Position numbers and translations under genes: made by a program. Shown here piece after piece: positions 29,318 through 50,300 of a stretch of 64,000 bases of DNA. The notes beneath the pieces were generated by a model that saw only the letters and a program-made list of their open reading frames with translations, made no database searches and was not told the origin of the DNA. The stretch spans positions 2,976,001-3,040,000 of the forward strand of contig JBLDXI010000007.1 of assembly GCA_047495785.1 (NCBI GenBank), in the 5' to 3' direction. Within the stretch, counting starts at the first letter, position 1; each line of letters begins with the position of its first letter. The stretch comes from Lepidodermella squamata. Its lineage: Eukaryota; Animalia; Gastrotricha.

Positions 29318-32300
29318 ATGTTGTTCGCGCTGGGTGTTGTTATCAGCGCGTTTATACACATTTCTGATGAAGCACCGGGAGATTCGTATACTCTATGCTC
29401 ATCCCCTGTATCAATCGACGCTTCGGTTCAAAAGTGGGGCTATATTCAAAGTGATAGGTATCCGAACTACTACAGAATGGGGGTCTCGTGCAATTTCGAG
29501 TTCAAGGTCGCCAACCCCTACTACGACTACATTTCATTCAGGGTACTCGAATGGAATCACGACGGATCAGGCGGTGACAGACTTCAAGGCTGGACAAATA
29601 CTGGATCCGGCTATAATTATGTTAATTGATAGGCATCTGATAATAGTGGGACATAATCACACATATTTTACAGCTCGTGGATACGTGGATGCATATCGGA
29701 GGAGATTGGTTCAACAGCCAAAGGAACGTTGGTCATTTCCAGATGAGATGGTCTAGTGACACTTATAGCTACTACGCTTATTATTCTGACCCTGCAAAAT
29801 TTCGCCTGACCTGGACATATCAGCGAGCTGTGTTCGGCTGTGAGCTGAGCCCACAACCATACATTTTCCCGAACACTTCTAGACATGGAGTGCTGACGTC
29901 ACCCTTTTTTCCGGATCCGTACCCGACTAACGTGCAGTGTAGTGTGATCATCGATGTCGACCAGTCTGTTGATTCGGTGGAACTTGTCACTAATCAGTAT
30001 GATCTAGAAGATGGGGACAGCCTGACGCTTTCCGTCGGTGACGCGGCTTGGGGCAACTGGGTATCTTACAAATCATTTGCCGGGAATCCGGGAACTCTTC
30101 GACTGTACGGAGTTGACGTCAAGATAACATTCACGTCGGATCACAAAGCAGTCAGCTACGGCTATCAAATTTATTGGCGCCTAATATCCAAAGGTAAATT
30201 TAGCGTAAAATCGAACTTCAGTTTATCCATGAATTGTAATAATAGAGCGATATTCGTTGTACAAACCGGAGAGTTTAATCGGACTATGGCCTCTCACAGC
30301 GGCTCACCGCGGGAGAGACTTGATTGGAGGTTGCGACCCTTTGGTTTACCCAACGACAGGGAGCATCACGCCAGCCTATGGCCCTTTCGGTTCGATTGGA
30401 GGAGGGTTGTACTTCAATCAGGCCTATCTCAACATGACAAGTCCAACATGCCAAGCTTCCACAACTCTGACTGGGAGCTACGCGATATCCCTCTTCGCCC
30501 AGTCGAGATTCGCAACGACACTAGCGGAGTGGCTTTATAATCCCGCTGGCGGAGGCTATGGCGTGCACGTGACTTACGATACTCCAGGTAAGGCGTGGTT
30601 CAATCCACAGCTCCAGGGTGGTGGGACCGATTACATCACGTGGACTGTTCCATCGGTAGACAAATACCAATTCATCTCCGCCCAATTTGACGCAGCAACG
30701 AAAACTGCCACCGCCTTTCAGGACACCGTAATCAAAGGGCAAAAGATTTCTACAGGTGCAGTATCGCAATCAGGACAAGGATTCCTTATCGGCTATCGTG
30801 ATAATCGCCTTGTAAATGGTGGAAAACTGTTTTTGTCGCGCCTATCTTGTCTGAGTGTCTATAACAAGACAATGTCAGCCGAAGAGTTGACCCAAGTCCG
30901 ACTTATGTGCAGCAAAATTCAGCGTCAATACGAAGTTTTCGCCCCGAATAGCCTGATGGGATGGTGGCCCCTGGATGGCTACGACAGCAACATGGTCTTC
31001 GATGACATCAGTGGAAATCAGAGGCACGGTGTCTTCAATCAAATCTCGGGCATCACAGTCGCAACCGGTCCCAATAACATGACTAATGCAGCACTGAATT
31101 TTAACGGTGCCTCGAACGCTTGGGGTTCTGTTGTCAGCGACTTCACTGCCATGAAAAGTGCGTTTACCATCAATATTTTCGTTAAGTCATCCACTGCGAG
31201 TCGAATGGGAATTTTAATGTTCGGCGAGGCCGGTTACGGTGGTTTGAGCGTATACCGACACGGCACTGCTACTCAATTCCACGTTAACATATTTGCCAAC
31301 AGCAATCAAGGCGTAGATCCAGTTGTCGACGGTATAGACTACTCGCAATGGATCTTTCTGTCAGTAACTTTTGATAAGAGAGCTGGCAAATTGGTGTTTT
31401 ATTCTAACGGCGCTCAAATCTACTCAAGGGTCACAGGAGCTGTCACCGTTGGGATAGATCCCACCCTAGGCTTTCTTTTGGCCATACCGTGGACAGCGTC
31501 CGACAAGGTTCCATGGGTGGGGCAAATGTCCTGCTTGTCCATGTATCAAGTGGCTCTGAATTCAGCCCAGATAAAAGACGTCATGGATGCATGCTTATCC
31601 GGCCATCGTAGACCGGCAGTATTTCCCGAAATATACGGATTTTGGCCTCTCACTGGTTTAACAGGAACACTTGACATCAGCGGCAACGAGTTTCATGGCG
31701 TCCCCAAGTCATCAAATGTAGTATCGACTGACGGTCCGTATGGAGTTCCAAATACTGCCTTTCAGATTGGGAACGACACTAACAGCTATTTAAACTTTCC
31801 TTATGCTGACCTGAACTTGGGTACAGGATCTTGGACAATTTCGTGTTACGTGAAAAATATGGACTCTGCAGGCGGTCCACTTCTTGAATATCTAGTCGCT
31901 GGCAATCTACCTGGTTTTCATATCTGGGTCTATGCCTCGACGTTTTACGCCAATTTTCAGAATGGATTTGATACAGCTGTGGATGGTTACAACTGGCAAC
32001 TGTGGCAATTCATCACAGTAAGATATGATTCGAAAAACGGCCAAGTTGCAATGTTTCGCGACTCAGCTCTACTTGGAATGTGGAACTCAGTGCCCAGCGT
32101 CGCGTCAACTTACGGCTTCAATCTCGGAAAACGGATAAATGGCGGAGCATACTTAAAAGCGAAGGTTGCATGTTTGACGGTTTATGCAAGAATGCTGATG
32201 CAAGACGAAATAGCGCAACTTATGGGCATGTGCCAGTCATACCTCATGGACTCGGCAATGTACAATGAAACCAGTCGACAAGTTGGCGAAGTCAACTGCG

Positions 32301-35300
32301 ATTTCGACTCTGATTTCTGCGGGTGGACTCAAGATACTAACGACGATGGCGACTGGACCTTGGAACATGATGCTACACCCACGGGACAACCTCAAATTTT
32401 CACAACAGGTCCACGTTTCGGAATTTCAAAGCAACGAAGCGATGGCAAGTTTGAAGCGAATTTCAGTAATTTGTAATTTGTTTAATATCTTCTATTCTGA
32501 AATTAGCACTTGATCAATATGCCCTGATGAACGCTGGCGCTGTGGGTGCTAATGGCAAAGTGGTTCGCATGATATCTCTACTGATTCAACCTGGTTGGAA
32601 GTGCGTCTCGTTCTGGTATTACATGGGCGGAAAGGATGTCAACTATCTGACTGCTACCCTGTTTATTTCTGGTCAACAATTCTGGACGAGGAGTGGCAAC
32701 CAATTCAAGCAATGGCGATTTGCAACGAAATCGATTTACCTTAGCTCACCTGATCAGGTATGAGTAGCCTGTAAGCGGCTCAATAACTGAATTATCTTTT
32801 TTGCAGATTTCCATCACTGCGGCAAGTGGTGCGTCGAAATACTCTGACGTAGCGATCGATGGTGTGCGAGTAACAGATGGCGTTTGTGATGCGCCGAGTT
32901 AGTTGACACCATATCTCACATCGAATATTATATTCAGCTAATGATTATAGCTCCGTGCCCCAAAGGCTGGATTCAATTTGGAAGGAAATGTTATTTCACT
33001 ATGCTTCCATACGTGGACACATCTTCTAATGCTTACAATATGTGGTGCCGAAGACGATTTCATGGTTATGTTGCTCGTCCCGAGAATCAAGCCGAGTTCG
33101 ATTTCTTGAAAAGCGTCATCGGTTCTACAACTATACATATCGATGGCTACAAATCTGGCTCGAGTTGGCTCGACGCCGACGGTTATCCTATTCAATACTT
33201 GCGTAAAATGTGAATGAAAAAAATTGAGCTTATTACATATCTTTCCTTCCGAAATTAGCCTGGGCTTCAGGACAACCAGGATCAAACACCCTCATTGCAA
33301 TGAGTTCTAGTGGTTTTCTCGGAATAACAAGCTCAGCTACCAATGCTATCGTTTGCGAAATTGACAAGCTGAAAGCGCAGTACATTACTTTCAACTGCAC
33401 GCTCGACGACAAGCACCTGTGCGGCTGGTGGAATCACGACGGGGACACGACCGAATCAATGACTGGAGCTACCCTGGATGCGTGGCGCGACTAATTCCGG
33501 CACGGACTGTGCCAAATTAGCAGCTAACAATACGCCAGTATGAACCCGATGCTCATAACTCGTAGTATGATGGATTTCAGAGCGGTTTCACCTCTAGGGA
33601 AACACCTGTAACAGGTATAAAGTCACATGAGGTGTCATTCGATAGGAAATCGCTTCAATAAGACGTAAAATATTTTTCAATCGATTTGGATTATCGGCTG
33701 ATTTTTCACAATTTAAAATCGATAAATCACTGATGATTCATCGATCTGATGATTCATCCAATCGCTACCAGCTACTGCAAAAACTACGTCATTGACCTCA
33801 CTAATATGGGTCAAGTGGTGCGCGCTACCACTAATAATAATGAAAGTACTATGCAACCCTCAGCTGCCTCTCCCCCTAGCGTGGGGGAGAGGCCTCTATT
33901 TCTTGGGGTTTAAATGTGAGCGAGGGACGATAATCATCTGTTGAAGTTGTTGGTTTCAAGAGACGGGAAGCGCGAAAGAGCTGTTGATCTTCAAGTAGGA
34001 GTTAGTCTCCAACCTTCGCGTCAGTGGCGTCGGTGGCTTAGTGGTAAAAGAGGCTGCGTGTGTAACGAATGAATGAGGGTTCAAATCCTGCAACCTACAC
34101 GCATTTTTATTTTTTATTTTTTTATTTTTATTTTTTTCTGGGCGATCATTGCCAAATGTCGGGTTGCGATAGCCCAGCAGATTTCGGAAGATATTATAAG
34201 CCGCCTGATTTTTAAATAAAATGCTTTAATCTATGCCAACAAACTCAATCAGTATACTTGGAATACCCACTTCAGATAAACTCTGGGTAACAGCTACTTC
34301 AATATTTAATAAGCCGAAACCTGAAAACATAATCTAGGGAGAGGGGGTTGAGATGCCCCTTCCTTTCAGGGAGGGGCGATGGGGTGGGCATGGAAAAGGC
34401 CTTGTTGCCAGACCAACTAAAAAGGGGCTGATCACAAACTTTTCGCGCTAGCAAAGTCAGCCCCCTTGATGGACGCGCGAAAAAACGAAGTTTTCCGGGG
34501 CCGGCTAGGCCCCTACAAAATCTCACTCTGTGCGCCCCGTTAAACGCGACGCCGAGTTATACGGTTGGCCACTTGACCTAAGTTTGGGCTAGGGGATAAA
34601 CTATGATACATACGAACATGCGGAAAATTCCAAAAAATGCGCCTTTTCGCTAAATATTACTAAAAGATTGTTTAGACCTATCGACCATACGGCTGATTTT
34701 TTATGAATTTAAATTACTTTTTTGATTTTTTATGCAAATTACATATTCATGAGCACACTGGGTCATGACCCGGTTAACGGCAACGGCGAGCGCGCACCTT
34801 TATTACCCTCAATAAAATTTTATAACGCGCAAACGAGAATTCGCGATTTTTACCGTAAAACCAGGTTGCCTCCCTTCCCCAGAGGGGGAGGGAGGCATCA
34901 AAAATAATGAGCAAAAAATGCTCTATCTAATGGTGTAAATTTAACGAATATATCACAATCGGCTGATTTTCTATTGATTTTAAAAGGTGCGCACACGAAA
35001 AAATTGTCCACTCTCAAACAGCATTTAGAATTTTCAAGCGCCAGTAACCTCTCTGAGGCTGCGAAATTTGTCGTGGTAAACCCAGATTTTTAGACACTAG
35101 AGAGAACGGCGATTTCTTTGATACTAAGAACGCTCTGAAATTCGCGAGATTTATGATGAAGAAGTGATTTGCGCACTGCACATTTTTAATTTTTTCCAGC
35201 GCTATACATGGCTGATTTTTCACCCGGAATTCATAGGTTTAATAAAATTGTGCGCAGGTTTCGTTTACATAGGCGTATAGAGCAGCTTTCGCTGATTTCT

Positions 35301-38300
35301 TCAAGACCAAACACGTCCTTGTAGTCCTTATCCGGAGCGGGTAAGAATTGCGCGGGAAAACTTGTCCTTTATTTTAATTTTTCAGTGTGCTGTGAGCAGC
35401 TTTTGTTGATGTTTTTCAATAATGCAAGACGTGTTTATTATTTTATAAGGCCTGAACTTAGCTTGATGGAGTAAAAGATTTAAGGTGCGTCTCAAATTTT
35501 CGTAAATTTGAGATTTTAGTGCCAAGATTCTTGCCATCTGACGTAAACTTGTAAAACTATTACAATCTTGGCCGCTCATGCAAAGATGCAAAACAGCTGT
35601 TTCGAAACGAAAAATACGTAATGACCTCTACGAAGTTTTCTGAAAACGTCAATTTAGTAAAAGGACGAAGCATAAGGACCTTGATGACATGTAGTGGTCA
35701 TAGCTTTTCGATGGAACCTATTTCTGTGATATTATTAAAGCAAGCACTTTTCAACATTCTTATTTATATGTTTGTTAGATACAGAGCATTTGAGCTAATA
35801 ATCTCACCCCTGGCGACTCCGAAATGATTTTTTTCACCAGGCTACGTTACTAACGACATTTTTTCGTTCTCAACGTAGAAAAAATTAGAGAACACATGCC
35901 CTCAATCGCGACGTTCTATAATATCACCCAATTTTCTAATATTTTGTGAAACTTCTACATGAACTAGGTTGTCGGTTGCATTTTCAGTCGGTTTTAAGTC
36001 TGTATTCGGGCAAAACGAGATTTAGCTGACGCTATTTTCATGGTTTTTTGGAAGAGTGACCAAAAAGGAACTAACGTCATTTACTTCACGTCATTTTTTT
36101 ACTTTGCTCAAATTTTCAGATAATTTTTTGTCACTTTAATTTGCGAGATTTATTTGTTCCATAATTGGCTTCAAATTTTAACCTCATGTATTTGCTATTT
36201 AGCATTTTTGGTTGGTTAGTTTACGGAATTCTAACAGTCTTTTTTCCATCTTCTCAAGTTTAGATTTTACCGCCATATGAAGCCGATATATGACTTCAAG
36301 CTAATTAAATCATATTTATAGTTAGATTTTTTAATGTTTAGAACTTCATTTTCAATCGCACTAGATTTTTTTGGAAATTTCGCTTGAAATGACAAGAGTT
36401 GGGTTCGGCAAAATTCAAAAAGACAGCACTCACAACTGCTCGATTTGTTCCATACCTAATTTTAATGCCAGAACTCATTGCGCGAGGTGCTCCAAGCACC
36501 ACCCGAAGAGAGACTGTGAGGATGTTACGCTTTCAACAGGTTTTTAGCTCTATTTTTGCCGGTTAATCTTATTACGTTGCACATTAAAGGTCAAACTGGA
36601 CCCGCAGTTCATGTTTCTCTTCCGCTAGTTCAAGGTGAACTTTTCAAGGTGAAAAAAATTGGCGCCATGAATGAATATGTTTTTTCGATATATTATTAGC
36701 CGAAGAACCTGTGCCTGCTGAAAACTTGACAGGTGAAAATTGCCCGAAGTCTTCTACGTTTTATTCTACTAACGTTTCTCGTAGTCTCTTCGGTTGACAA
36801 TACTAGGCGGTCTTATGCCGAAGTTTTAACTGGAACTGGAACAGGCGGTATTGGCATCGCAGGACCTGAACTTGCAAGACGTTTGGGCGGCAGTGGTTTC
36901 CGGTACACTGATTCCGATTATAACCGAACTGATAATATTTTACGTTAGTTTTATAAAGTATTACTAATAATTCGCGGATAGAGGCACTTTGACTTTTGGT
37001 CCTTGATACTCGCGCTTTACGAATAGGAGGACCCACAATAGCTGGTCTTGAAACCGCCAGCCGTAGTACACAGTAGGTAGTAGCCGAATTTTTAACTCTT
37101 TTACCAAATAGTTTAGTTTAGTTTAGTTTTATTTTGCTACGTAAACAGGATGAATATATATATATATGTATCTATCGCATAGATACTAGTTAATTATATA
37201 TAAAAATTAAATATTTGTCGATCAGGAGCCAGGGACACGTCCACTCACATTTCATTTTTGCTTTAGGTTCAGCTTTTTTTTAGCTTTAGCTTTAGAGCCT
37301 ATTTAACCTTGAATTCATCTAAACTTTTGCCGTGCCGTTATGGCGGCGACTGCTCGTAATTGATTGCAGCTGGATTATTTGGATGTTTCTTGTTGGTTAT
37401 TTTTCTGGGCAAAATGCAAGCTGGGCATTTCTGGGCAATTCTGGGCAATTTACGTACTGTAATGACTAATGACTAATGATATCAATTTTCGGCCAAATTG
37501 CCATGGGCCGTGGGCCGTGGGCCGTGGGCCATTTTTTACGGGTTAAGGTCTGCAATTTTTGGGCAGTTTATTGCTCTTTTATAGCTGATTGTTTTTTGTT
37601 CACTTCTCACCAGCGTTTGGCTCAACCGAGATTGTGTTGCCCTTTGATTTTGTTGGTTCTGACAGCGAGTGGCTAATCGAGGTTGCGAGATTAAATAAAT
37701 TTCGAGTCATCGATAACATCGGGCGGGGTGACTGCCAATTTTATGCTGTTAGCGATGCTGCTAAATTCCAAGGGATGAATCACAGTTACCTGGAACTGCG
37801 AAGAATGACGCAGCGTGGTTTAATGACTGGACAATACGACTATCTTGTAGTGCATGATCCTCAAGCCGAAGAAGATGCCCTTAATAACGGCCAACATTTG
37901 CCCAGCAGAAATGTCGAAGAATTGGCACGACGCATAGGATTGCCTGCAGCTCAGGGCGGGGACTGGGGTGACAATGTGTCACTATTGATTATGGCTAATT
38001 GTCTCGATGTTACCATCGCCGTGTTTGACAACCGTAGCCGTCGCGTGTGGCGATGCGGCGATGGGCGGAGGGCGCTTTACATTGCTTATGACCATCAATC
38101 TCCACATTACCAGGCACTGGTGCCTTTGATCGAAGGCGATATATCAGGAAACGGACACGTATCAATGATTTTTCATCCATATCATCAATCGGACGATGTT
38201 ACCAGTCGTGAAGGAAATCAGATGGAGCAAATTGATGGTGAGTGAAACTAATTAAATTGATGGCGAGTTATACTAAGACTTACTCAAAACAGTTAATCTC

Positions 38301-41300
38301 AACTGTTCATTTTAAATTAAAGGCCAGACTTTTAATTTGGACTTGATTTCAAAGTGTATATAATTCCATTTTCACTTTGCAGCCGTGTACGAAACAATTA
38401 GACACTATTTCAATTTCCGAATTTGATAGCTGCGAGCTTAATTATTTTCGCGGGGTTTTATGGCTGTATGTTTTGCAGGGTTATATTTTGGTTATACGAA
38501 GGGTCTGCGAATATTTTTCAAAACTGCTATTCGGCTTGCAAAGGGTTCATATGACCATTACTGCAAAATTATGGCAGTGCAAAAGCAACCATGAATGTCT
38601 GACATATTATTTTAATCTGTCAGTGCCTGGAAAAACAAACCTGTTTGACTCGAAATTTCACCAATCAAACAATCATATTCCATAATCTTATATTGCACAT
38701 TTCCATTTTTCTATTCTATGCTATCAGATGACAACTTCGGGGCATTTGGCGACTCGCTCTACGACCAGGACTTGAACCTTTTCCGTACTTCTACACTGCC
38801 ATCGGTGAGATCGGGTCATGTGGAAAGCAGGTAAATATTTTATCATTTTCGTGTTTTCTCATTTCATTTTTTGAGAAGTTCGCTTACAACCCACCACCCG
38901 CAGCCGGTTGAATTGTTAGCAGGTAATTTTCGATATATTTTTCGCATTATAAGTTAAAAAATTGTATTTTTCACCTTCTTCTTTCAGTTGATCATTCTGC
39001 CACCACTGGGTTCGAAGCTGTGGAAGAACATGGTATAGTAGCTTGATGTTACGGAAAAGAGGCGCACTATTTATTCCACCTTCATTTTTTAGCTGGTGAT
39101 TCGGAAATCGTTGGCCTCGAAGTTGTTGAAGAGCAGGGTATAAAAAATGCTTTTAGCTCCAATTTTATCGGTTTTTATTACGTTTCGACAGACATTATCG
39201 ACGGCAGCAATGAAGTACTCAGTTCGGAAGCGAATCTCGATCCACCACCTCCTTACTCTAGAATTCCAACCTCTGATGGTGAGTTGCACATTAAGCTAAA
39301 CTGGTAGCAACTGACACCTCTTTCTTTCCTTCAACTACAGCGGAGGCGCCGGGTGGTCAATGCTGTTCTTGTAGACGGCATGCCACGGAGCATATGCCGT
39401 TGCCCTTAGCTTTCGTTGAGCGTGATTTTCGAGGCAAGGCTTACGGTCGTTTAGCGAAATCAAGGATTCACAGACGGCAATGGTTATGTCGAGATTGCGA
39501 GCTTTATCTTCTCCATTCAAGCAACTCTTTCAGTTTCAACGTTTGCTGGCCTGCACTGCTTTATTCCGTATTATTTAAACCTACATTTCGACACATCGGC
39601 CTGCTGCTGGAGCATGTTCTTCCGCTCAATGTGAAAGAGATGTGGTCTGCTGAATTGCGATCGACAGGTCAATTTAGTTTCCTTCAAGCCGAATCGTATT
39701 TTGCTGACAAAACGGATGTTGTTACCTTGTTCGAAAAAGGAGCGCATAATCAAACTTCTGGTTTGTCGTCATAATATTACTTTAGTCATCGCGATACGCT
39801 GAATTTTGACCTTTGTTAGGAAGTTTTCGAAAATATTTCAATGCAACTTGTTTTCCTGATGTCCGTTGCCCGATGGGTTGCTGGGCGCATTCAGAAATGT
39901 GCCAGAAAATTCCTCTGCACAACTTCATGCATCAATTCGGGGGCCAGAAGTTTGGCAATTCAAAGGACAGATGGTTCACCTCTGCTCGGCCCGAGTTCCC
40001 AGAACCTCCTTGTGTAACTAAATTGAATTTCATCGTCAAACACGGCATGGTCATTGATGATTCTCTTGGAATCTGCATTTTGGCTTGCAGCAGTCATTCT
40101 AAATCGACATTGTTTAACGAATTTGTGCACCCAGCTCGAAATGTATTTGATGACGTCGGTTGCTCGCAACTTCCCGAAATAACTGCCGCTGTTATGCAAC
40201 AGCCTAATTTTGTACGCTCTGGCCGAATTGGGGTGAACGCCGTGTCGATGCCAACGGTCGAAGTTGTTGGTGGCCATTTTGGCTTGAGCAGCTTTTCGTT
40301 ATTTCCTTGTTTACGGGAAAAATTGGGCGACGTCGGAGAAGACTTGTACCCGCAACTTTTAGCCGCTGAACAGCGCCAGGAAGTGAAGAACACTTTGTTT
40401 GCAAAGGAAGGGTTCAAAGACGCGCATGACCTATTACAACGTTTCAGCCCTGTGCTTACCGCTAAAATTGACGCCGTTGAAGCGGCGGCGAAAGGCGCTA
40501 CATTTGTTGATTATGTCGACGCTTACACGTCATGGGCAGCAATTCGTCGAGAACAGCTGGGGTTTCCTTCTCAACCGCAAGGTGCAAATGTTCCAGCAAA
40601 TACGAGAATGTTATTGAGAAATATAATGACGAACCCTATTCATCCAAATAATGATCACGGGATGAAGCCATATCTCATCAAAATTCCTTCACAAGATGGC
40701 CCGTGCAGCCTTCTCGGCCAAGTGCTAAATGGTATTTTAAATTGCCGCCCGATCTATCGAAATGTACTATCATATCATGTGAATGCTGAAAACGCTTCTA
40801 TCGGTACTGTGTCATTTGCTAAATTACTTTGCATAGCCGCTAATTTCGCCAGCAAGCGAACTCAGATGGTGACAGGAGGCACGGTGAGCAGCGCATTATG
40901 GACACATACTACCGCTCCGAACAATCAGCCCATTATTCCAATGCAGTACAGGATTAGCAATCTTCTCAGTCTATTAACCATGAGAGTTACCAGCGAAGAG
41001 CTAGGCACTTCTGGCGGTCAGCTCGTGCGTGTTCGCATCCGACCAGACAATCTGCCGCTTGATCCAGGAACTCGTGTAACCCGAAGCGTTTCTCGTCAAT
41101 GTTAGTTATATTTATCAGCCATACCTTTGCTTTATTATCTCCTTTTTCTTTCAACAATCTCTTTATTGGAAAACCGCTTTCGCAATGATACACATCTTTT
41201 GTGTGATTAATATCCTAATTATTGTCATATTTACTTTATTTAGTGCTCGCGCAAGGTACTCTTATTACTGTTGCCGGCCAGCCGTTCATCAGCTTCGTTC

Positions 41301-44300
41301 CGACACATGACATCGTTATCATTCAGACAGAGGTGGGCAGCCAAGTCACAACGTCTAAACTGCCGCTCAATTTGGCCGGTCATTCGTTACATTTCATGGT
41401 TTTGAGAAGGCCAAATACTCGAAATCAGAACAACTATTTCACTCTTATGCGATGGGGTCCGCAGTTCAACGGCTGGTGGCTCATGGACGGAAAGAAAACT
41501 ACTAAATGCGAGAATATTGCTGATGTCATAGGTGAATTTACTGAATTGCGTTGTATTTTTTTGGCAAAATACCCATTTAACTTGCTAATAAATTTTACAT
41601 TTTTTGTCAATGAAATCGTTAAGGTTGTAGTAGTGGTTTTTCATGTAGAGTCGGAAATATTCAAATAAACGATAACAATTTTGAATTTTGAATGAAATCA
41701 CTAGACGTCGCAAAACTGTTCTTGTTCATTTAAATTCACTGTTTTTCGGTGATATTCTGGTTGATAACGCACGGGTTTAGCGGATACGTGGCCAACACTC
41801 AAAAGTGCCGCCGCAAACTGGCGATAAGTTCAATTTCAGAAACATATTCCAACGGGATTTTTGGGACATAGTGACGCATCTCCAGGCTAAATGGAAGCTC
41901 AAGTGGCTTTTGGTTCCAATCTGCTCATATAACACAGTATTTCTTTTATTATATACTTCATTGCCGTTTTATTTATTGTTATTCTCTGGTATTTTCAGGA
42001 GACGTTATTTACGCGGTTTACGCCCGTCCAGGTGATGATAATTTGCGCAAGGAAGCCGTTTTGTGTTCTATCGGCGGTCAGCGTCGAGCAGTGTGTGCGG
42101 AACATGTTGATAAATTGGATGGTCATGGTTTCATCAAAGTTTCGAAAGACCTCAGTGTCTCTTGCTGCGCGCTAAAAGGAAGAGGCCGTAGAAGAAAGCG
42201 ATGTGACAATATCGCTCTATTTCGTTGTCCGTTCGGTATCACCACTGGAAAATTGTGCGATGTTGGCATCTGCAATAATTGCTACAAAAAGCTACCTCGC
42301 GATGTTTCACAGCGGTTCGCAAGACATCCTGAAATGCCCTGCCTTGCGCCCAGCCTTGGTCATAACCATGACGATGACAGTTCGCCAGAACATTCAGACG
42401 ATGAAGGCAATGTTCTACAAGGCCGTATTGACGATGCAGAGGTTGTTTTCGGAGCTGATGCGGATGAAAATAATGAGGACATGTTTTACCCATTGGGCGA
42501 TGAAGATCCAATTCTGAATCAACAAGTTCACCAGGCCCATTCTGAACGAGTAAAATACAACGTCGCAAATCCTCATGCCAAGATTCCCAGCAAATTCCTT
42601 CTAGTGAACGCCTTTAGAATCTTAGAGCGGAACGTCGCACCATATCCTTCAAGTCGAACAACGTTGCTCTTAAATCAATTGGTACGAGCAGGAGACGCTC
42701 CTGTGGTGTCACTTATGTACCCGGAGGCGAACTTGTTCCCTTCTGTTTATCATTCCAGTGCGAAAGGCAGCGTTCTTGGAGCATTGCCGTATTATCAATA
42801 TTCTTCGCCTGAATCGGGTAAATATAAAGGCGTTGCGCCTTTGGACGAATACTTACAAGTACGCACAATGGACGGTCAGCTTGCAACCAGTCGGCGACTA
42901 GATTATCTTCACTTCGCCTTCGATATCAGCCAGGGTCAGAAATTGAATCATTGTAGTTCAGAAATGGTCTTTCGGCGCGGATTTGAGACTGCAGCCGAGA
43001 AAGGCGGCCTTGGATCTGATGCGACGCAAACTACCCTAAGCTATGACCAGTTCGACTCATCCCGCAAACAGAAAGAAATCGCAGCTCAAATGGCCGAGGC
43101 GCCGTGGGATTATTTCTACACAGTAACAGCTAATGACTTAGGTAATTTTACATGCTATTTTTCGTTGTTTTCTGGTATCATACCTACATATCATTATTTT
43201 CTTTTACCTTATAAATGGCTTCAGGTTCACCTGGAGTTTGCGAAATTGTTAAGGCCATTCGTGTTGCGTCGAGGAAAGGATTGCCTGCGAATGTCAAATT
43301 ACCGCCAGAAGCATTCAACATATCGCTTAAACAAGCCAAGGACATTGAAATTGACGAGGACCGGTTTCGTAAATTATATGATTCGTACTTCTTCATCATT
43401 AACAGCACTTGGCAGCGGACAGTCAAAAATTTGCAAATTTTCATCGAGAAAAGCCCATCCCGACTTTTGGGTAACGTTCACACTCATTTCTCGCGCATCG
43501 AGTTCCAGTCGCAGGGTTCGCTTGGCAACAAATGCCATGTACATGGAGGTATCTCTGTTCGAAATGAAAGCGATAAGCAGATTAATGAGCGAATTTGTCT
43601 TGATCCTGAGAAGTTCTATTCCAGGCAGTTCAATTCGTCATACCGAATGCTACTTAAGGATGGCCTTGTATCAGATCGTGAGGACTTTGATTTTCTGGTC
43701 CAGCAGTTGAAGCCTCTACAGCGGCATAATTGCGGAAACGCTGGCGAACGATGTCAGAAGCCACGAGGTGAAACTGGCGAGCTTATGTGCAGAGTTCGTT
43801 CCCACCCGCGTTCCTATGATTACTATTATGATGAGAAAAACAACTTGTATGAGCCTGAAGTATATGCTGAACTTGAGCGTCTAGGTTTGGCTATTTCTTC
43901 GATGTCTGGGGATCAAAAGTCGTATAAATTGCTAGAAGAAACTTTGAAGGCAGGGACCTGGCATTATCCTTTAAGTCAAGTTGATGAGAACTGCAAATTT
44001 ATTCCAACTGTTCCTGTTCTCGCCATTATGATGCGTGGCTCTACCAACGTTCAGAGGTGCGACAAGCGCTTCATGGTGTCCTATCTCGTAAAATACGTCG
44101 CCGGAAAGGTCATTTTGAATACAATTCTTTTCCCTGCCTAATATCGATTTTTGTTCTAGGAAGTTCATTCGAAACCATCCTACAGGTACACGAAGAATCC
44201 TGGGGAGATAACTCTTCAACCCGTTGAAGGCCCGCCTTTGAACGAGAAACTTACCAGCGTTCTCATTTATCAAGCATCGCAAAATCGCGCTCTCCGTCGT

Positions 44301-47300
44301 CAAAAGCACTGCAACGTCATGGAGATACCTGCCACTGAGATGCATTGGTTTCTCCGATCATTTCCGTACACCCACTCGAACGCGCTTTTTGTCCACGTCA
44401 ATACGCAGCCTCCGGAGTATCGCGTCGCATATAAAGTCAAACGACGGCGGCGAGGTGCATTACCTTCTGGTAAATTGAATTGCTAAATTGTATTACATAC
44501 CGCAGTTTTTGTCTTTTACTTTTCAGGCGTTGATGGAGTTGCCTTTGAACCCAATGCACTCAGGCGCGATTTCAATCAGCCGTGGCGTCTCTTCTCCCAG
44601 GAACAAATTCAACTTGCACGCGAGTATCGAGACTCCGGGTTGTGCTGTGGGGCGATGGAGCGGTTCAACATTCGAGCCCCCGAGTTGTTGATATTTTGCA
44701 ATCCCGCTGATTTCCACAAAATATTTGTCCCGTTTTATGGAAAATCGAAGCTGGTATTGACGGAAGATGTCGAATTCTCGCCATTTATTGATGCTTTGGG
44801 TCGCATTTACAAAATTCGATCGTGTTCTCTCGAGTATGGGATGGATTATTTGAATCGACAGCCTCAATCAAACCCGGCGGTGCCGTTTCTCAAATCAATC
44901 TTCAGCAGACTTTTGGCTGGCGATGAAGAATTGGAGCATATTTTCTTGGATAAGACTGACGCAGTTTGCGCTATTCCTGTCGTTTCAAGCTTGACGCCAT
45001 CAAATCGATTGAAATTTTTTTATCATATCGCTATGACTCTCGGTGAAGTCGACAATGAACTTCTCACTTTCAGCGTCGAGGATATGCGAGCCGCATTTGC
45101 CAGGTGTCACCTGGTTACTGCAATCCAGCGGAATGGTGAAGTCGAATATCCTAATTTGCGCGAGGAGATAGATTCTATCTTGATACGTTATTTGCTAAAG
45201 CAGCTGGTTTTCTTGCCCGTTTCTTCGAAGCGTCTCGGTGCACTGTTTCTTGGTGCTAAAGCTGCATTGGAGGACCTATTTTTCAATGACGGTTCAACTG
45301 ATTTCGGCTTACCAGCGATTTCTGATGTTGCTCTCAAAGCTCAAGTTGATCGAACAATCGCATACGTTGAGCGCGCACAACGAGAGCTCCTTGTGAAAAC
45401 CTGCCATGCACAGCTACTTGGATTGATTGATTTACCTCCCGTTGAGGAGTTCCTGAATGCTAGCATCGAGCAACCTGCCGACTGGCATCCGGAAATTCGT
45501 CATGCGCCAGGTAGGCTCTCTTTTCACCCCTTTTTTTAATTGAATTTCTTGTTTTATCCATTTTAGGACAAACTGATGATTCGCTCAACGAACAGCGACG
45601 GGCCCTGCATCATGGACTGGCTAAGATCAATGCATTGTTGACAAACCGTCGTAGCTACAAACATTCTGTATTGGTCGGTCCGCCTGGCTGTGGAAAAACC
45701 TTTCTGATCCAAGTCCTTACTTTGTATGCTCTTGGCCGCGGACACACGGTTTGTCTCACAGCTCTCACCTCCGAGCGCGCCAGATCTCTTGGTGGACGCC
45801 ATTTGCATTTGGTTTTTCCAATGCGAGTTCACCCTAGCCAGTATTCTCACGCATTGTTGGATGCTCAGGATTGCATTCGTCGGTTGGCTAGGGATCCTAT
45901 GAAAGCTATGCTACTTTTCAGGACTGACATATTCATATTCGAAGAAATTGGCTTGATATCGGCTGAGATCTATGCCCAGGTTGACGCTGTCATGCAGTAC
46001 ATAACATGTTGTGGACTGAAAATGGGCGGCAAATTGGTCTTGGCGACCGGTGACTATTGCCAATTGATGCCAGGTAATAAATTTATGTCTTCAACACCTA
46101 TGCGTTCTTTAGCAAGCTTTTCTTTTCATTAATTCATTAATTTCCATATACCATAACCCATAACATAGCCTATTTTCAACATTGATATTTCGGTGAATAA
46201 GGTGTATTAATTTGTTCCTTAATGAGAGAAAAAGTATGCATATGCAAATTAGCGTTATAGATGCAACGGGTCCCATTTCAGTAGTAAGCAGCAATAGCAA
46301 TAATAGAGTCTACATTTTCCCTAAGTTCTGATTTGTCGTCATTGTTAGTCAAAGTAGCCAGACAGGTCACATGTTCCACATAAACTTATGAACTTTTTCT
46401 TTCAATCTCGTTGTAGTTTCCGGTCGACCATTTTGGTTATCGACACACCTCCTGTTTGCGTTCGATGTTTTCCTACTTACCGAATTCGTTCGGGCTGCGC
46501 AAGACGCAGAAATGCAAGAAATTTTAACGTTGCTGCGGTCGCCTGTTTTAGATCAGCAACAAAGAGAGCGCATTCGAGGCATCATTGTCAACCGCTGTCC
46601 GTTCTACAATTCTTGGGATGATGTTCCTGATCATTTACTGAGGATTGTCACCACAAGGCGAGCGCAACAAACTGTTGTTGAGTCGTTTTTGCAGGCGAAA
46701 CGTAATGATGCATCAACTGTGACCCGGCAATGCTCATCGATTGATGAATGCCAATATCGTGATGGCTGGGAACCGACTTCGAACAGGCAATATATCAAAA
46801 AGCTGAACTCTACTTGCTTGGAGCCTGAAGTTTTGACGCTTTTTGAAGGCCAGGTTCTTTGTTTAACTTTCAACAACATTGTCAACGACGCGAGGCAGTC
46901 ATTTTCCCAAGGACAATTGGCAATCGTTCGGCACATCCCAGCTGATTTGATGCCATTGACGGCTAGAGTCGGAGTCAAAATTGTACCGCCAGGTCATCGC
47001 TCCCTCGCAGTTATACCTGAAGATTGGCCTCTACTTTATATTGGCAGACACACTGGACCTGAAGTTTCTGTGGGTAGAAAACATGTCAGAAGAAAGCAAT
47101 ATCCATTTCGATATTACATTGCTGGTAATTGCTTTTTTAGTTGCTTGGCAGTTATTTCAGTTGCTTGGCTCTTGGCTGAACTCTCATATATAAGTATTGT
47201 TCTTTTATAGCTACCACCCATAGAGTCATGGGTTGTACAGCTGAAGATGGCGTTGCTATCCAAGTTTCATCAACAGAGAGAGCATTTCGAATGTGGGAGA

Positions 47301-50300
47301 AGGCCCAATTCCTTGTCATGATGTCGCGCTCCAGGTCGCTTGACAAAGTGGCTTTCGTTGGAAGCGATCGTCATGGCATACTCGAAGCAATCGACGCCAT
47401 TCTTATGGAAACGTCTGCTTTTGATGAAGCCACGAGATCAAGACTGCGCCAAATGGACATCCTACCCCAGGCTGATATGGTCACTGTCAACATCGACCCT
47501 GTTTTCCTTTTTACCAACTCTGTTCTGCCCCAAATTGATTTCGGGGTCGTCTATCATATTGTCTCTGAAAGCAGACCTTTTGCATCGTATATCGGACAAA
47601 CGGAAAGATCCATTCATCAACGCCTTGGGGAGCACAACACAGGTAATATTTGCAATTTGCTGATTTACCGTCAATTATCAATTTCTCATTTAGGAAGCGG
47701 ATCAAATTTCACTCGCGGTGATCAATGGGTTTTGTGTACTATCATTCATGGTTTTCCAGATGACGCCAGTCGATTGCGCATGGAGCGCGACATTCACCTT
47801 GCAATGCGAGGTGACATATTTCCGTGGCAAATGCGCGCCGTTCTACGTCAGCAAGTCGCCATTTTTAACAACGACAATCCCTTCGCTATCCGTCTGTCAG
47901 TCGTTGCTTTTTGTGACCTCAATGAACAACACGTCAGATATCTTGCTCGGCATTTGCCTCCTGGGACCGTCATTGTTGGTCGTCGCGTTTGTTGCTTTTT
48001 AGTTCACATGGATTTGAATGTGTCAGCTTTCTTTTTAGGAGTGATTCCATGTGAACAGATTTTTCGGCATGTCGTCTTTTCCTCGCGACATCTATGTCAT
48101 CTTGCTTGTTCTACCGTTTCAATCGTTCCCTTGTCCAAATTTTGGAAGATGGTTTTTTTCTAATTTACTTCAAATAAATAATACTCATGCAAATCTTCTG
48201 ATTTGTTATTTTATCAGACATCAATGTCATATCGCTGATATTTTTTTCTTTTTTAATTCCTTATTGTCGTCATTGTGCTAATTTGACAAGCACACATCGT
48301 CATGCATGACCTGATTAGCAGCGACGTCGCTCACGCACCTTTTACCCTCAAATGTTAAGCATGACAAATAATAAAACTTGTTTACATTTTGCTGCAATAG
48401 AGGGAGGGGGTTGATTCTCCCCTACTTGCAGGAGGGGAGAGTTCAGGGGTGGTCATCAACAAGTCATAGACATTGATTACATCATACTCTTGTCAGTTAC
48501 ATACCAAACACAACTCTGCTGGTATTTTTATTTCTGGATTTTGACACTTGGTCAGGCCTCGGAGGGCAATGGGAAAATGATGTTAATCAGAACGGCCCCA
48601 ACTGGGACTGGAATCAAGGCAGTAAGATTTTTTCAAATTGAAAAATTTGGTACCAACTCATTTGAGCTAGATTCTCGGGGTTACTATGCGATGACTGCAG
48701 ATAAAATAGCACCGACGTGCACTAGCCTGTACACTGAAATAAGCTCGCCCTTCATCAAACCAGGAGGGCCGAAATGTTTCCGCTTCCGTAGCTATCGATC
48801 CGCAGTATCGAATAAAATTGAGGTTGTGCCAGGTCTAATATCGAGCGGTGCAATAACCGCTGTACCAGGATGGACTATAACGGGAAACGTAGACGGAACT
48901 GCATTGACATGGAGAACAATCCAGGTCGAATTAAATTACCAAGTTGAGTACCGAATCCTCATCCGTATTTGGAGTGCTTGCGACGGTAAAGGGCTGGGTA
49001 ATCAAGCAGTGGACGATTTCATGCTATTTGACGGAACTTGTACTATTACGCCAAACTCGCAATACGCAACCTATACAACAAACAGCATTCGACCGCTGCC
49101 ATCTTGGCAGGATGCGACCGATTCGATAAACGACGCCAATTTTTTCTACTGTACTGACCTGAACTTACCGCAGTGGCGACCGATAAGATTCAGCGATGAC
49201 GTTTGGACGTGCGACTCATTCGACCTACCAGCCACGCATCAGCGAACCGGCCCTCAGTCAGACTACACAGGCGAGGGCAACTACTTGAACGCCGATAATG
49301 ACCTGGGCACTTCTTTGACGGGAGTCACCCGGCTGAGCGGTCCAGCAGTTCCCGCGGGACTCCGCTGTGTCATTTTCCACTATTTCCAGTTCGGCTACGA
49401 CGCTGGTGAATTCCGTCTCAGCGATCAAACCGGGCGATTCTTATTTGCTGTGCAGGGTGATCAATTGCCAACGTGGCGGGAACATCGCATCTTGCTGAAT
49501 CAGCCAACGCCAACTGTACTGACCTTTACGAGTAGCTCGGCTCTCTTCGACGGTTTCACTCACTATCAAAGATTCGGCGCCATTCAAATCGACGACATCT
49601 ACGTCAGAAATGGAACTGATCTTTGCATGGGATACATGGATTGTGACTTCGATTCTCCCACGAGTATTGCGGACTGCGGGTGGCGTCAGAATGAAACTGA
49701 CGACGGCGACTGGGTACGTAACAAAGGTGAAACTCCAGCTGGAAACGGATTAACAGGGCCAAATGCTGACCAGCGGACCGGAGCGGGCCATTACTTGTAC
49801 TTTGACGCAACCGAAGTAAAGCCTGGGGCACGAGCTAGAATTCACATGCCACCAATCGCTGCTGGGAACTCCTGCCTCACCTTTAATTACCATATGTGGG
49901 GCAGCGATGTCGGATCCTTACGAGTTTTCTACGTTCCCCAAAACGCATCATCAACCTATGTTGGAAACTTCCCTCCCTATGGCGAAATTCAAGTTTTTGG
50001 ACGATCAGGGTCACAGGCGAACTATTGGCTGCGGGCGATGGTTCCTTTGCAGTTGAATCACCCTCAAATAATGACTTTCGAAGCCATCCGAGGCAACGGC
50101 GACCGAGGTGATATTGCGATCGATGATGTTGTTCTTCTGCGTGGTTCATGTCCTCAAGATCGGTCATTTTCTTGCAGCTTCGAGCGAGGCGATACTTGTG
50201 CCTGGATCAACGATCCAGCAGCAAACCGCAAATTCACCGTCCGCCGCGGTAAGACTCCGGGCTCCCCTATAAGCGGCCCGGAAGGTGATAACACTGGCGC

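What the first reader, a model, noticed from the sequence alone, without database searches (positions are those of the whole stretch)
33690..48460. Giant, apparently intact Helitron-like element with NZF-OTU-Rep-PIF1-GIY-YIG architecture
Seen: motifs for a RanBP2-type Zn finger, OTU protease, three HUH Rep motifs (FYTVTAN, HVH, YLVKY), PIF1-type helicase motifs and a GIY-YIG nuclease, in one orientation and joinable by GT-AG introns into ~2,900 aa with no internal stop that I found. Known: Helitrons encode Rep plus PIF1; Helentrons can add OTU and an apurinic (APE) endonuclease. Inference: this domain set, with GIY-YIG in place of APE, marks a distinct rolling-circle lineage. It is the best candidate for an undescribed system here. 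I cannot confirm it is absent from TE databases.
Basis: partly seen in the sequence, partly recalled or inferred. Interest (0 to 1): 0.92.

Follow-up and report, generated by a model that had tools for sequence, protein, structure and literature searches.

The report
Helitron-like transposon with SLX1-type nuclease
This is a real, apparently intact 14-kb rolling-circle ("Helitron-like") jumping gene whose single giant protein ends in a DNA-cutting domain like the cell's SLX1 repair nuclease. It belongs to a widespread but barely described branch of such elements, and here its exact ends and insertion site could be read.

Summary
On the + strand, 14 exons (ATG 36389, stop 48161-48163; 13 GT-AG introns; 2,786 codons, no stop) encode Zn finger, OTU protease, Y2 HUH Rep (FYTVTAN / HVH / YLVKY), PIF1 helicase and a C-terminal SLX1-type GIY-YIG nuclease.

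A paralogous empty site shows a 15,060-bp insertion (33480-48539). It consists of a 991-bp non-autonomous unit followed head-to-tail by the 14,069-bp autonomous element (34471-48539).

Units start G[GA]NNGCGCR, end CTNGAT, and sit at or behind a CTNGAT hexamer. That would explain the tandem arrays and ~650-bp "satellites" of this family in the genome.

The build is a family trait: 800 protein clusters match, and 17 of 18 long members carry PIF1 plus GIY-YIG and none an AP endonuclease. Named hosts are a tunicate, a hagfish and an ostracod.

The Rep is a true but very distant Helitron Rep, and its HUH loop fits neither the Helitron nor the Helentron signature. I could not resolve whether the branch lies inside HLE2 or beside it.

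The only mention I found in print is one sentence in the HELIANO paper. This scan has already found the same family on other DNA of this genome. There is no RNA evidence for this copy. Verdict: new variant of a known kind.

The parts
33480..34470 (+). Non-autonomous unit (856-bp-repeat family), head-to-tail upstream of the element. Starts GCGTGGCGCG and ends CTTGAT.
   Evidence: 87-94% identical to tandem copies on C54 and C34. 5' motif and hairpin. Shares the 3' subterminal motif with the element: score 37 against shuffles 15.3 +/- 2.1.
34471..48539 (+). Autonomous Helitron-like element, 14,069 bp (the junctions can slide by up to 5 nt).
   Evidence: Paralogous empty site. 3' end shared with C17 and C23 relatives and with a second context in run X1. 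5' motif.
34471..35388 (+). 5' terminal region: GGACGCGCGAAAAAACG, hairpins at 34482-34494 and 34497-34513, and a non-coding leader.
   Evidence: 75-78% identical to non-autonomous relatives L026 and L027. Fold (z -1.0, weak). No ORF of 80 aa or more.
36389..36539 (+). Exon 1: ATG and a Zn finger C-x2-C-x10-C-x2-C.
   Evidence: Conserved at the N-termini of paralogues C29 and C64a, which also start with M. Zn_ribbon_RanBP E 0.009, below the cut-off. Donor.
36785..36943 (+). Exon 2 (RRSYAEVL motif).
   Evidence: 52% identity to the C64b upstream exon, E 2e-11. Splice sites.
37614..38237 (+). Exon 3: OTU cysteine protease.
   Evidence: Pfam OTU E 2e-4. GDCQF and HY motifs. 46-52% identity to paralogues.
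39341..39760 (+). Exon 4: Cys-rich family core, profile positions 144-269.
   Evidence: Family profile iE 8e-18. Splice sites.
39820..41100 (+). Exon 5: conserved domain of unknown fold.
   Evidence: Family profile iE 9e-38. No Pfam or NCBIfam hit. AF2 model pLDDT only 61.
41244..41531 (+). Exon 6. The splice sites are the least certain here.
   Evidence: Family profile iE 9e-5. Junctions.
41999..43141 (+). Exon 7: Cys-rich region, pre-Rep region and Rep motif 1 (FYTVTAND).
   Evidence: Family profile iE 1e-65. Motif. The intron right after motif 1 is shared by 5 paralogue lineages.
43225..44108 (+). Exon 8: Rep HUH (EFQSQGSLGNKCHVH) and Y2 (YLVKY).
   Evidence: hhalign to canonical Helitron Rep gives probability 97%. 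The modelled fold of paralogue C29's Rep core (first row of A3) matches Helraiser 7LCC with Z 12.3.
44160..44469 (+). Exon 9: Rep-helicase linker.
   Evidence: Family profile iE 1.5e-12. Introns of 51 and 57 nt.
44527..45510 (+). Exon 10: linker and helicase N-terminal region.
   Evidence: Family profile iE 2e-58.
45567..46073 (+). Exon 11: PIF1 helicase, Walker A GPPGCGKT.
   Evidence: Pfam PIF1 E 7e-11. Motif. The equivalent ORF of paralogue C29 has Helraiser as its best PDB sequence hit, E 2e-7.
46417..47124 (+). Exon 12: helicase C-terminal half.
   Evidence: Family profile iE 3e-59.
47211..47642 (+). Exon 13: end of the helicase and first half of GIY-YIG (GVVY, YIGQT, R, HN).
   Evidence: Pfam GIY-YIG. 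Alignment A5.
47694..48163 (+). Exon 14: second half of GIY-YIG (catalytic E) and the stop codon.
   Evidence: In-frame 51-nt intron 47643-47693. Profile A5 hits SLX1 with E 3e-16.
48398..48456 (+). 3' subterminal motif with hairpin CTCCCCT...AGGGGAG, about 85-140 nt from the end.
   Evidence: DNA fold z -3.15, 1 of 200 shuffles. Homologous motif in the upstream unit, C17, C23 and the 657-bp satellites.
48534..48539 (+). 3' terminal hexamer CTGGAT.
   Evidence: Same end followed by four different flanks: window, C17, C23 and a loose end in X1. Empty site.

Best explanation
An autonomous, apparently intact rolling-circle DNA transposon of the Helitron-like superfamily (34471-48539). It encodes one protein of about 2,786 aa: Zn finger, OTU protease, Cys-rich N-terminal domains, Y2 HUH Rep, PIF1 helicase and SLX1-type GIY-YIG nuclease. 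It belongs to a large, deeply diverged lineage in which the GIY-YIG nuclease sits where Helentrons carry an AP endonuclease.

Inferred mechanism: Rep nicks one strand at the junction hexamer CTNGAT next to the 5' motif G[GA]NNGCGCR. The 5'-3' PIF1 helicase peels the strand off. The strand is joined into a target at or behind a CTNGAT hexamer. Because each unit's own 3' end is such a hexamer, new copies land head-to-tail next to old ones, giving tandem arrays and satellite-like arrays of short non-autonomous units. The SLX1-type nuclease most likely cuts the second strand or a branched or hairpin intermediate at the target. The OTU domain would act on host ubiquitin signalling.

Shown: gene structure, domain identities, family membership, ends, empty site, arrays. 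Inferred: nick site, order of steps, roles of GIY-YIG and OTU, present-day activity.
For: Domains and motifs.

Collinearity with 7 paralogues and with full-length database proteins.

Splice model without stops.

Sequence differences from run X1 are rarer in predicted exons than in predicted introns: 6 in 2,176 nt against 7 in 485 nt, Fisher p 0.004. Three of the 6 exonic changes are synonymous.

One fused ORF elsewhere: PIF1 plus GIY-YIG in the 669-aa ORF L012:4423-6429; OTU, Rep, PIF1 and GIY-YIG in the single 2,814-aa ORF of P0005.

Family size and architecture: 800 clusters at E<=1e-3; PIF1 and GIY-YIG in 17 of 18 long members.

Rep homology to Helitrons: hhalign probability 97%, E 4e-11; structure match to Helraiser Z 12.3 against 6.8 for the next hit.

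Nuclease type: SLX1, E 3e-16.

Transposon nature: paralogous empty site with a 5-nt TGGAT overlap; shared 3' end in four contexts; junction motif found 163 times against 14 for the control; 15-kb and ~650-bp tandem arrays.
Against: There is no RNA evidence for this copy, so the introns and the single transcript are predictions. Junctions 3, 5 and 6 have alternatives.

The coding part is single-copy: the nearest paralogue has only about 51-54% Rep identity. Recent movement of this subfamily therefore rests only on one loose end in X1.

No terminal inverted repeat links its own two ends. The 5' hairpins are not better than shuffles (z -1.0).

The nick site and the nuclease's role are inference. 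The junction cannot be placed more precisely than 5 nt.
Confidence: 0.85

Rival explanations
1. It is simply a subgroup nested inside HLE2 (Helitron2/Helentron) that swapped or captured a GIY-YIG nuclease, not a lineage of its own.
For: HELIANO classed a GIY-YIG-bearing family of Sphagnum as HLE2 (PMC11417382). OTU, hairpins at both ends, tandem arrays, satellite-like non-autonomous partners and a C-terminal endonuclease are all Helentron-like traits (PMC4067079). The nearest language-model neighbours are DUF6570 plus Helitron_like_N clusters, at 0.88, which is only a lead.
Against: The HUH loop is E.Q-x7/x9-H.H in 133 family proteins. None has the Helentron RGSPHxH or the Helitron RGLPHxH signature. 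Pfam Helitron_like_N hits 41 places in this genome but no copy of this family, and only 5 of 18 long members reach E<=1e-3. DUF6570 is not detected. The target is CTNGAT, not TT. A profile of Rep and the region upstream of it reached only 800 clusters at E<=1e-3, among 1.84 billion representatives. That is what I would expect if canonical HLEs were not reached.
Confidence: 0.4
2. This copy is a domesticated or immobile gene kept by the host rather than an active transposon.
For: Single-copy coding sequence. Intact frame, with fewer differences in exons than in introns. 13 spliceosomal introns, one of them at a position shared by divergent paralogues.
Against: It has family-typical ends, sits head-to-tail with a non-autonomous unit, and is absent from a paralogous site. 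The same 3' end stands in a second context in run X1. Many paralogues and arrays exist in the genome. Catalytic motifs of all the enzymes are kept.
Confidence: 0.1
3. The blocks are several neighbouring genes or a decayed mosaic, and the continuous reading frame is an artefact of choosing splice sites.
For: No RNA data. Some junctions have alternatives. Other copies in the genome are broken.
Against: The blocks cover profile positions 144-2458 of the family model in order and without loss. Relatives encode the same order in single ORFs. All 13 junctions have consensus GT-AG sites in the right phase.
Confidence: 0.05

Closest known systems
Helentron / HLE2 (Helitron-like element 2; Poulter 2003; Thomas et al. 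2014, PMC4067079; HELIANO, PMC11417382)
   Same: RepHel core with a Y2 HUH Rep and PIF1 helicase. A nuclease is fused to the helicase C-terminus and an OTU protease lies upstream. Structured ends with hairpins, short non-autonomous partners carrying tandem repeats, and a giant protein of more than 2,000 aa.
   Different: The nuclease is an SLX1-type GIY-YIG, not an AP endonuclease. The HUH loop is longer and lacks the RGSPHxH signature. Pfam Helitron_like_N hardly sees the Rep. No subterminal inverted repeats were found between this element's own ends. The insertion site is a CTNGAT hexamer instead of TT. The 3' hairpin lies about 100 nt, not 30 nt or less, from the end.
HelenSM92 of Sphagnum magellanicum (HELIANO, PMC11417382)
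   Same: The only published HLE with a GIY-YIG domain next to RepHel that I found.
   Different: It was described in one sentence as a captured domain in a plant HLE2 family with short terminal inverted repeats and a TT target.
Canonical Helitron / HLE1 (Helraiser, PDB 7LCC)
   Same: Rep motif order, two tyrosines, predicted fold (Z 12.3) and PIF1 helicase (best PDB sequence hit). The 3' CTGG or CTAG of most units reads like CTRR.
   Different: 14% Rep identity. No 5' TC end and no A/T target. Extra OTU and GIY-YIG domains. A branch of about 4 changes per site separates it from this genome's own HLE1 Reps.
IS91/ISCR rolling-circle insertion sequences
   Same: As I recall (not tested here), their target is a short sequence that resembles the element's own end, and they are prone to one-ended, read-through and tandem products.
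   Different: They are prokaryotic, lack a fused helicase or nuclease, and share no detectable sequence relation examined here.
SLX1 / UPF0213 (YhbQ) GIY-YIG nucleases
   Same: The nuclease domain matches SLX1 structures (E 3e-16) and keeps the Y, Y, R, H-N and E residues.
   Different: Here it is the tail of a transposase. No SLX4-binding RING/PHD part was seen.

Membership tests
Helitron-like superfamily (RepHel rolling-circle transposons) | HUH Rep with motif 1, HxH and two tyrosines (YxxxY), homologous to Helitron Rep | tested here: met
   FYTVTAND, CHVH and YLVKY. hhalign to canonical Helitron Rep gives probability 97%, E 4e-11. The predicted fold of paralogue C29's Rep core matches Helraiser with Z 12.3, rmsd 3.6 over 199 residues.
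Helitron-like superfamily (RepHel rolling-circle transposons) | PIF1-type SF1 helicase fused downstream of Rep | tested here: met
   Pfam PIF1 E 7e-11. Walker A motif. Rep to PIF1 lie in one 703-aa open frame in paralogue L005, whose longer 765-aa frame in L017 carries the PIF1 hit. Helraiser is the best PDB sequence hit.
Helitron-like superfamily (RepHel rolling-circle transposons) | Mobile: defined ends, empty site, non-autonomous partners, no long TIRs | tested here: met
   Empty site. Shared ends in four contexts. Non-autonomous units and arrays.
Canonical Helitron (HLE1) | 5' TC and 3' CTRR ends, hairpin about 11 bp from the 3' end, insertion between A and T | tested here: not met
   The 5' end is GGACGCGCG (or GATGG...). 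The 3' end is ...TTTCTGGAT. The hairpin lies about 100 nt from the end. The target is CTNGAT.
Canonical Helitron (HLE1) | Rep motif 2 ExQxRGLPHxH (PMC4067079) | tested here: not met
   EFQSQGSLGNKCHVH here. 0 of about 200 family proteins have RGLPHxH, whereas this genome's own HLE1 Reps do.
Helentron (HLE2 with endonuclease) | AP endonuclease (Exo_endo_phos) fused to the helicase C-terminus | tested here: not met
   No such Pfam hit in the window's exons, the paralogues or 18 long relatives. GIY-YIG is found instead.
Helentron (HLE2 with endonuclease) | Rep motif 2 with S between G and P (RGSPHxH) (PMC4067079) | tested here: not met
   0 of about 200 family proteins.
Helentron / Helitron2 (HLE2) | Subterminal or asymmetric terminal inverted repeats, hairpins at both ends, TT target | tested here: inconclusive
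   Hairpins occur near both ends, and a 9-nt inverted repeat spans the unit/element junction. However, no inverted repeat longer than 7 nt links the element's own ends, and the target is CTNGAT.
Helentron / Helitron2 (HLE2) | Rep plus helicase group with HLE2 references in a phylogeny | not testable with these tools
   No HLE2 reference sequences could be fetched.
SLX1/UPF0213-type GIY-YIG nucleases | GIY...YIG...R...HN...E catalytic core with best similarity to SLX1 | tested here: met
   GVVY, YIGQT, R, EHN and E are kept. The family profile hits SLX1 4XLG with E 3e-16 and UPF0213 with E 4e-7.
RanBP2/NZF zinc finger | W-x-C-x2-4-C-x3-N-x6-C-x2-C, over the Pfam threshold, with the ubiquitin-binding T-F/Phi residues of NZF | tested here: inconclusive
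   The spacing fits. Pfam gives E 0.009, 15.7 bits against a cut-off of 27. W is absent and N is not conserved in the paralogues.

The most novel reading that the evidence does not exclude
These elements form a third major branch of eukaryotic rolling-circle transposons beside Helitrons and Helentrons. Its marks would be a RepHel fused to an SLX1-type GIY-YIG nuclease, a lengthened HUH loop, and hexamer-specific (CTNGAT) head-to-tail insertion that itself seeds satellite DNA arrays. The branch would be spread from animals to marine plankton.
Probability: 0.4. Interest if true: 0.75.

Novelty: new variant of a known kind. Interest (0 to 1): 0.62.

Why it matters
Helitron-like elements are sorted today into two groups, and tools such as HELIANO force every hit into one of them. 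A large lineage that Pfam's Helitron model barely sees, and that carries a different nuclease, means these elements are under-annotated in animal and plankton genomes.

The replacement of an AP endonuclease by a structure-specific SLX1-type nuclease at the same position suggests that a second nuclease has a real role in this kind of transposition. That role could be tested directly.

The sequence-specific, end-mimicking target gives a simple, checkable explanation for how rolling-circle transposons build tandem arrays and satellite DNA. An intact copy with defined ends and an empty site is the starting material for a transposition assay.

Tried and rejected
1. RNA support: no RNA run holds the stretch. 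The one run laid is contigs only, so no splice or transcript evidence came from it.

2. The search for homologous proteins with the 18-protein alignment gave only 3 hits and no HLE2 references.

4. A genome search for Exo_endo_phos_2, meant to find APE next to those loci, was swamped by LINE-like hits and was uninformative.

5. HELIANO supplements are not held.

6. NCBIfam gave nothing useful. A single-sequence PDB search of the GIY-YIG exon found nothing; only the profile did.

7. The AF2 model of the conserved N-terminal domain (exon 5) had pLDDT 61. That is too poor to search, so the domain stays unexplained.

8. No asymmetric terminal inverted repeat was found between the element's own ends. 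blastn found no similarity between the upstream unit and the element; only the short motifs match.

9. The family's terminal motif is absent from distant metagenome members L036-L038, so the ends are subfamily-specific. The gene upstream on TARA contig L038 is unrelated.

10. My first reading, that three junctions were frameshifts, was rejected: all are short introns.

11. A 5-bp target-site duplication (TGGAT) was considered. It is disfavoured because C17 and C23 have CTCGAT at the 5' side but CTGGAT at the 3' end.

Full report
**Setting**

The window is G000:C7:2976001-3040000 of a 121-Mb, 151-contig genome. The ORFs that flank the finding carry CUB, Laminin_G_3, MAM, C-type-lectin-like and fibrinogen domains. 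This is therefore an animal genome, and the element lies between host exons on the same strand.

**Observation**

Stop-to-stop frames on the + strand between 36.3 and 48.2 kb carry these domains:
- OTU: E 2e-4.
- A weak HUH Rep hit: REP_ORF2-G2P, E 0.007.
- PIF1: E 7e-11.
- GIY-YIG: E 2e-5, above the cut-off.

So are the OTU Cys (GDCQF) and His (HY), Walker A (GPPGCGKT) and the GIY/YIG motifs.

The blocks are collinear with seven divergent paralogous copies in the same genome. Identity is 30-65% at the protein level, with E down to 1e-109. They are also collinear with full-length database proteins. A family profile is covered from position 144 to 2458 of 2504, in order and without loss.

**Gene model**

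Every break between blocks is spanned by a canonical GT-AG intron in the right phase, with no stop at the junction codon.

Exons: 36389-36539, 36785-36943, 37614-38237, 39341-39760, 39820-41100, 41244-41531, 41999-43141, 43225-44108, 44160-44469, 44527-45510, 45567-46073, 46417-47124, 47211-47642 and 47694-48160, with the stop at 48161-48163. The sum is 8,358 nt, or 2,786 codons.

Three junctions that I first took for frameshifts are 56-, 86- and 51-nt introns. A further 51-nt intron (47643-47693) is in frame and open. It shows up only as a 17-residue insert inside the GIY-YIG domain relative to all relatives.

The intron right after Rep motif 1 is at the same place in five paralogue lineages and is missing in two. 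Junctions 3, 5 and 6 are the least certain.

That step is referred.

**Independent support for the model**

Contigs of the one public run that holds the stretch (X1, not on record as RNA) differ from the assembly at 6 of 2,176 predicted exon bases. Three of these are synonymous; the others are F>Y, K>T and I>M. In predicted introns, 7 of 485 bases differ (Fisher p 0.004). Two indels in the last roughly 9 codons add up to +6 nt.

**One protein, not several genes**

- In paralogue C29, PIF1 and GIY-YIG lie in one uninterrupted 669-aa ORF.
- In paralogue C42x, Rep runs into the helicase in one 703-aa frame. A longer 765-aa frame of the same copy carries the PIF1 hit.
- The metagenome protein P0005 has OTU, Helitron_like_N, PIF1 and GIY-YIG in a single 2,814-aa ORF.

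**The N-terminus**

Exon 1 starts with ATG and holds C-x2-C-x10-C-x2-C. The same finger follows the start codon of paralogues C29 and C64a. Pfam's RanBP zinc-ribbon model gives only E 0.009, at 15.7 bits against a cut-off of 27. The W and N of that motif are not kept. 'RanBP2-like spacing' is therefore fair, but 'NZF' is not shown.

**The family**

A profile of the Rep-containing region (A1) found 800 clusters at E<=1e-3 and 192 at E<=1e-30 among 1.84 billion representatives. Many are 2,200-2,900 aa long.

Of 18 long and mutually distant members (21-30% identity to the first), 17 have PIF1 and 17 have GIY-YIG by Pfam. None has an AP endonuclease. Five reach Helitron_like_N, one has OTU and one has a Ulp1 protease. 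The GIY-YIG core residues are invariant across them.

Named sources are Styela clava (XP_039257388.1), Myxine glutinosa and Cyprideis torosa. The rest come from ENA, JGI and Logan assemblies, among them a TARA Oceans contig.

In a Rep tree this genome's copies cluster together (SH-aLRT 81). They are sister to the ostracod protein (99), and then to Styela.

**What kind of Rep**

The homology to Helitron Rep is real but remote:
- Profile-profile comparison with this genome's own canonical Helitron Reps gives probability 97%, E 4e-11, over 237 columns that cover all three motifs, at 14% identity.
- An AF2 model of paralogue C29's Rep core (pLDDT 79) matches only Helraiser (7LCC) clearly: Foldseek E 2e-3, VIA Z 12.3 against 6.8 for the next hit.
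- Pfam Helitron_like_N hits 41 places in this genome at up to 211 bits, none of them in this family.
- The family's own Rep model gives the canonical Reps only 7-18 bits, against 180-370 for members.
- A branch of about 4 changes per site separates the two groups.

Thomas et al. (PMC4067079) separate Helitrons (ExQxRGLPHxH) from Helentrons (RGSPHxH) by motif 2. This family has E.Q-x7-H.H (70 proteins) or E.Q-x9-H.H (63 proteins, this copy among them) and never either signature. The two loop lengths track the two main clades of the tree.

**The nuclease**

The family's GIY-YIG profile hits SLX1 structures best (E 3e-16), then UPF0213 proteins. The window copy keeps Y, Y, R, H-N and E.

**Ends and insertion site**

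Window 33300-33479 matches C7:3083148-3082969 (minus strand, 87%). Window 48535-48900 matches C7:3082973-3082609 (minus strand, 84%). In that inverted paralogue of the host gene the two matches overlap by 5 nt (TGGAT). It is therefore an empty site, and 33480-48539 (15,060 bp) is inserted DNA.

The insert has two units.

1. 33480-34470 belongs to a repeat of about 856 bp that stands in tandem on C54 and C34.

2. 34471-48539 is the autonomous element.
- Its first 920 bp and last 140 bp recur at 75-78% identity in two short relatives, on C17 and C23. There the two parts lie 230 bp apart instead of 13 kb.
- The 3' end ...TCTGGAT is followed by four different flanks: the window, C17, C23, and a contig of X1 that runs on unlike the window exactly behind 48539.

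Unit starts in all subfamilies read G[GA]NNGCGCR and are preceded by CT[GAT]GAT, in the orientation of the gene. Where a unit meets host DNA, the host side reads CT[CG]GAT.

Genome-wide, CTNGATGRNNGCGCR occurs 163 times against 14 for the reversed control. Many copies are spaced about 650 bp or about 15 kb apart.

The ~650-bp 'satellite' units share the 3' end of the C29/C64a-type autonomous copies.

A hairpin motif CTCCCC...GGGGAG lies 85-140 nt from the 3' end. It is present in the element (z -3.15), in the upstream unit (z -2.1), in C17 and C23, and as a 28-bp palindrome in the satellites. Hairpins also follow the 5' end, but they are not better than shuffles.

No inverted repeat links the element's own two ends.

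**Mechanism (inferred)**

By analogy with Helraiser, and with IS91 as I recall it:
- Rep would nick at the CTNGAT / G[GA]NNGCGCR junction, and the PIF1 helicase would unwind the strand.
- The strand would be joined at or behind a CTNGAT hexamer in the target.
- Because each unit ends in such a hexamer, insertion next to an existing unit is favoured. That accounts for the head-to-tail pair seen here, for the tandem arrays of autonomous copies, and for the satellite-like arrays of short units. Read-through of a 3' end would give the same picture.
- The SLX1-type nuclease stands where Helentrons have an AP endonuclease. A role in second-strand or branched-intermediate cleavage is the simplest guess.

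None of these steps was tested.

**Comparison and novelty**

The element works like a Helentron in general plan. It fails the tested defining features of both Helitron and Helentron: ends, target, motif-2 signature and AP endonuclease. It passes those of the Helitron-like superfamily.

Whether it branches inside or beside HLE2 is open, because no HLE2 references could be obtained.

In the held library the only mention of GIY-YIG with RepHel is one sentence on the Sphagnum family HelenSM92 in HELIANO, read there as a capture. Replitrons, as I recall them, have one catalytic tyrosine and no helicase, so they are a different thing.

Earlier notes of this scan describe the same family at several other places of this genome, one copy said to be transcribed. 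I did not test those copies. My reading agrees with them and adds this copy's gene model, its ends, the empty site, the junction hexamer and the HUH-loop signature.

**Verdict**

This is a real, apparently intact autonomous member of a widespread, barely described GIY-YIG-bearing branch of Helitron-like transposons. I class it as a new variant of a known kind.

Noticed in passing
G000:C42:1249690-1340103 and C20:3092456-3180559 (outside the window; L007-L010, L019-L021): Autonomous copies of a sister subfamily stand in head-to-tail tandem arrays with a period of about 15 kb. The same junction motif, CTGGATGGGGGCGCG, sits at each unit start.
   Followed up: partly
L014:8128-9581; many loci on C4, C64, C34 and C42: Arrays of ~657-bp units look like satellite DNA. 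Each unit starts GGTTGCGCA, ends CTAGAT and holds a 28-bp perfect palindrome CCTCCCTCCCCCGGGGGAGGGAGG. They look like non-autonomous partners of the C29/C64a-type elements.
   Followed up: partly
window 37109-37260 and 35928-36066: Two short dispersed repeats of about 150 bp (74-87% identical to many loci) sit inside intron 2 and the 5' leader of the element. They are probably MITE- or SINE-like insertions.
   Followed up: no
window 29647-33479 and 48540-51801; paralogue at C7:3082609-3083148 (minus strand): The host gene or genes have very large exons (CUB, Laminin-G, MAM, C-type lectin, 3x MAM, fibrinogen). There is an inverted paralogue about 43 kb beyond the window's end. A second, weaker paralogue of the 3' flank lies at C7:3072786-3073076.
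   Followed up: partly
G000, 41 places (for example L028-L035; C9:1112086-1112781 with a 2,403-aa open frame): Canonical Helitron_like_N elements coexist in the genome. The high-scoring ones carry the Helitron RGLPH signature. A group scoring about 60 bits with very long frames may be true Helentrons, but it could not be fetched.
   Followed up: partly
window 48136-48153: The X1 contig has a 7-nt insertion and a 1-nt deletion in the last roughly 9 codons (net +6). The extreme C-terminus therefore varies between the assembly and X1 while the frame is kept.
   Followed up: no
L038:4050-5088 (TARA Oceans contig): A distant family member from marine plankton also has tandem repeats of about 500 bp just upstream of its 2,201-aa single-ORF gene. 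This hints that repeat arrays in the 5' region are a family habit.
   Followed up: no
A2 (18 long family proteins): The N-terminal protease module varies. OTU occurs in this genome's copies and a few relatives, one member has a Ulp1 (Peptidase_C48) domain instead, and Pfam detects neither in most members.
   Followed up: no
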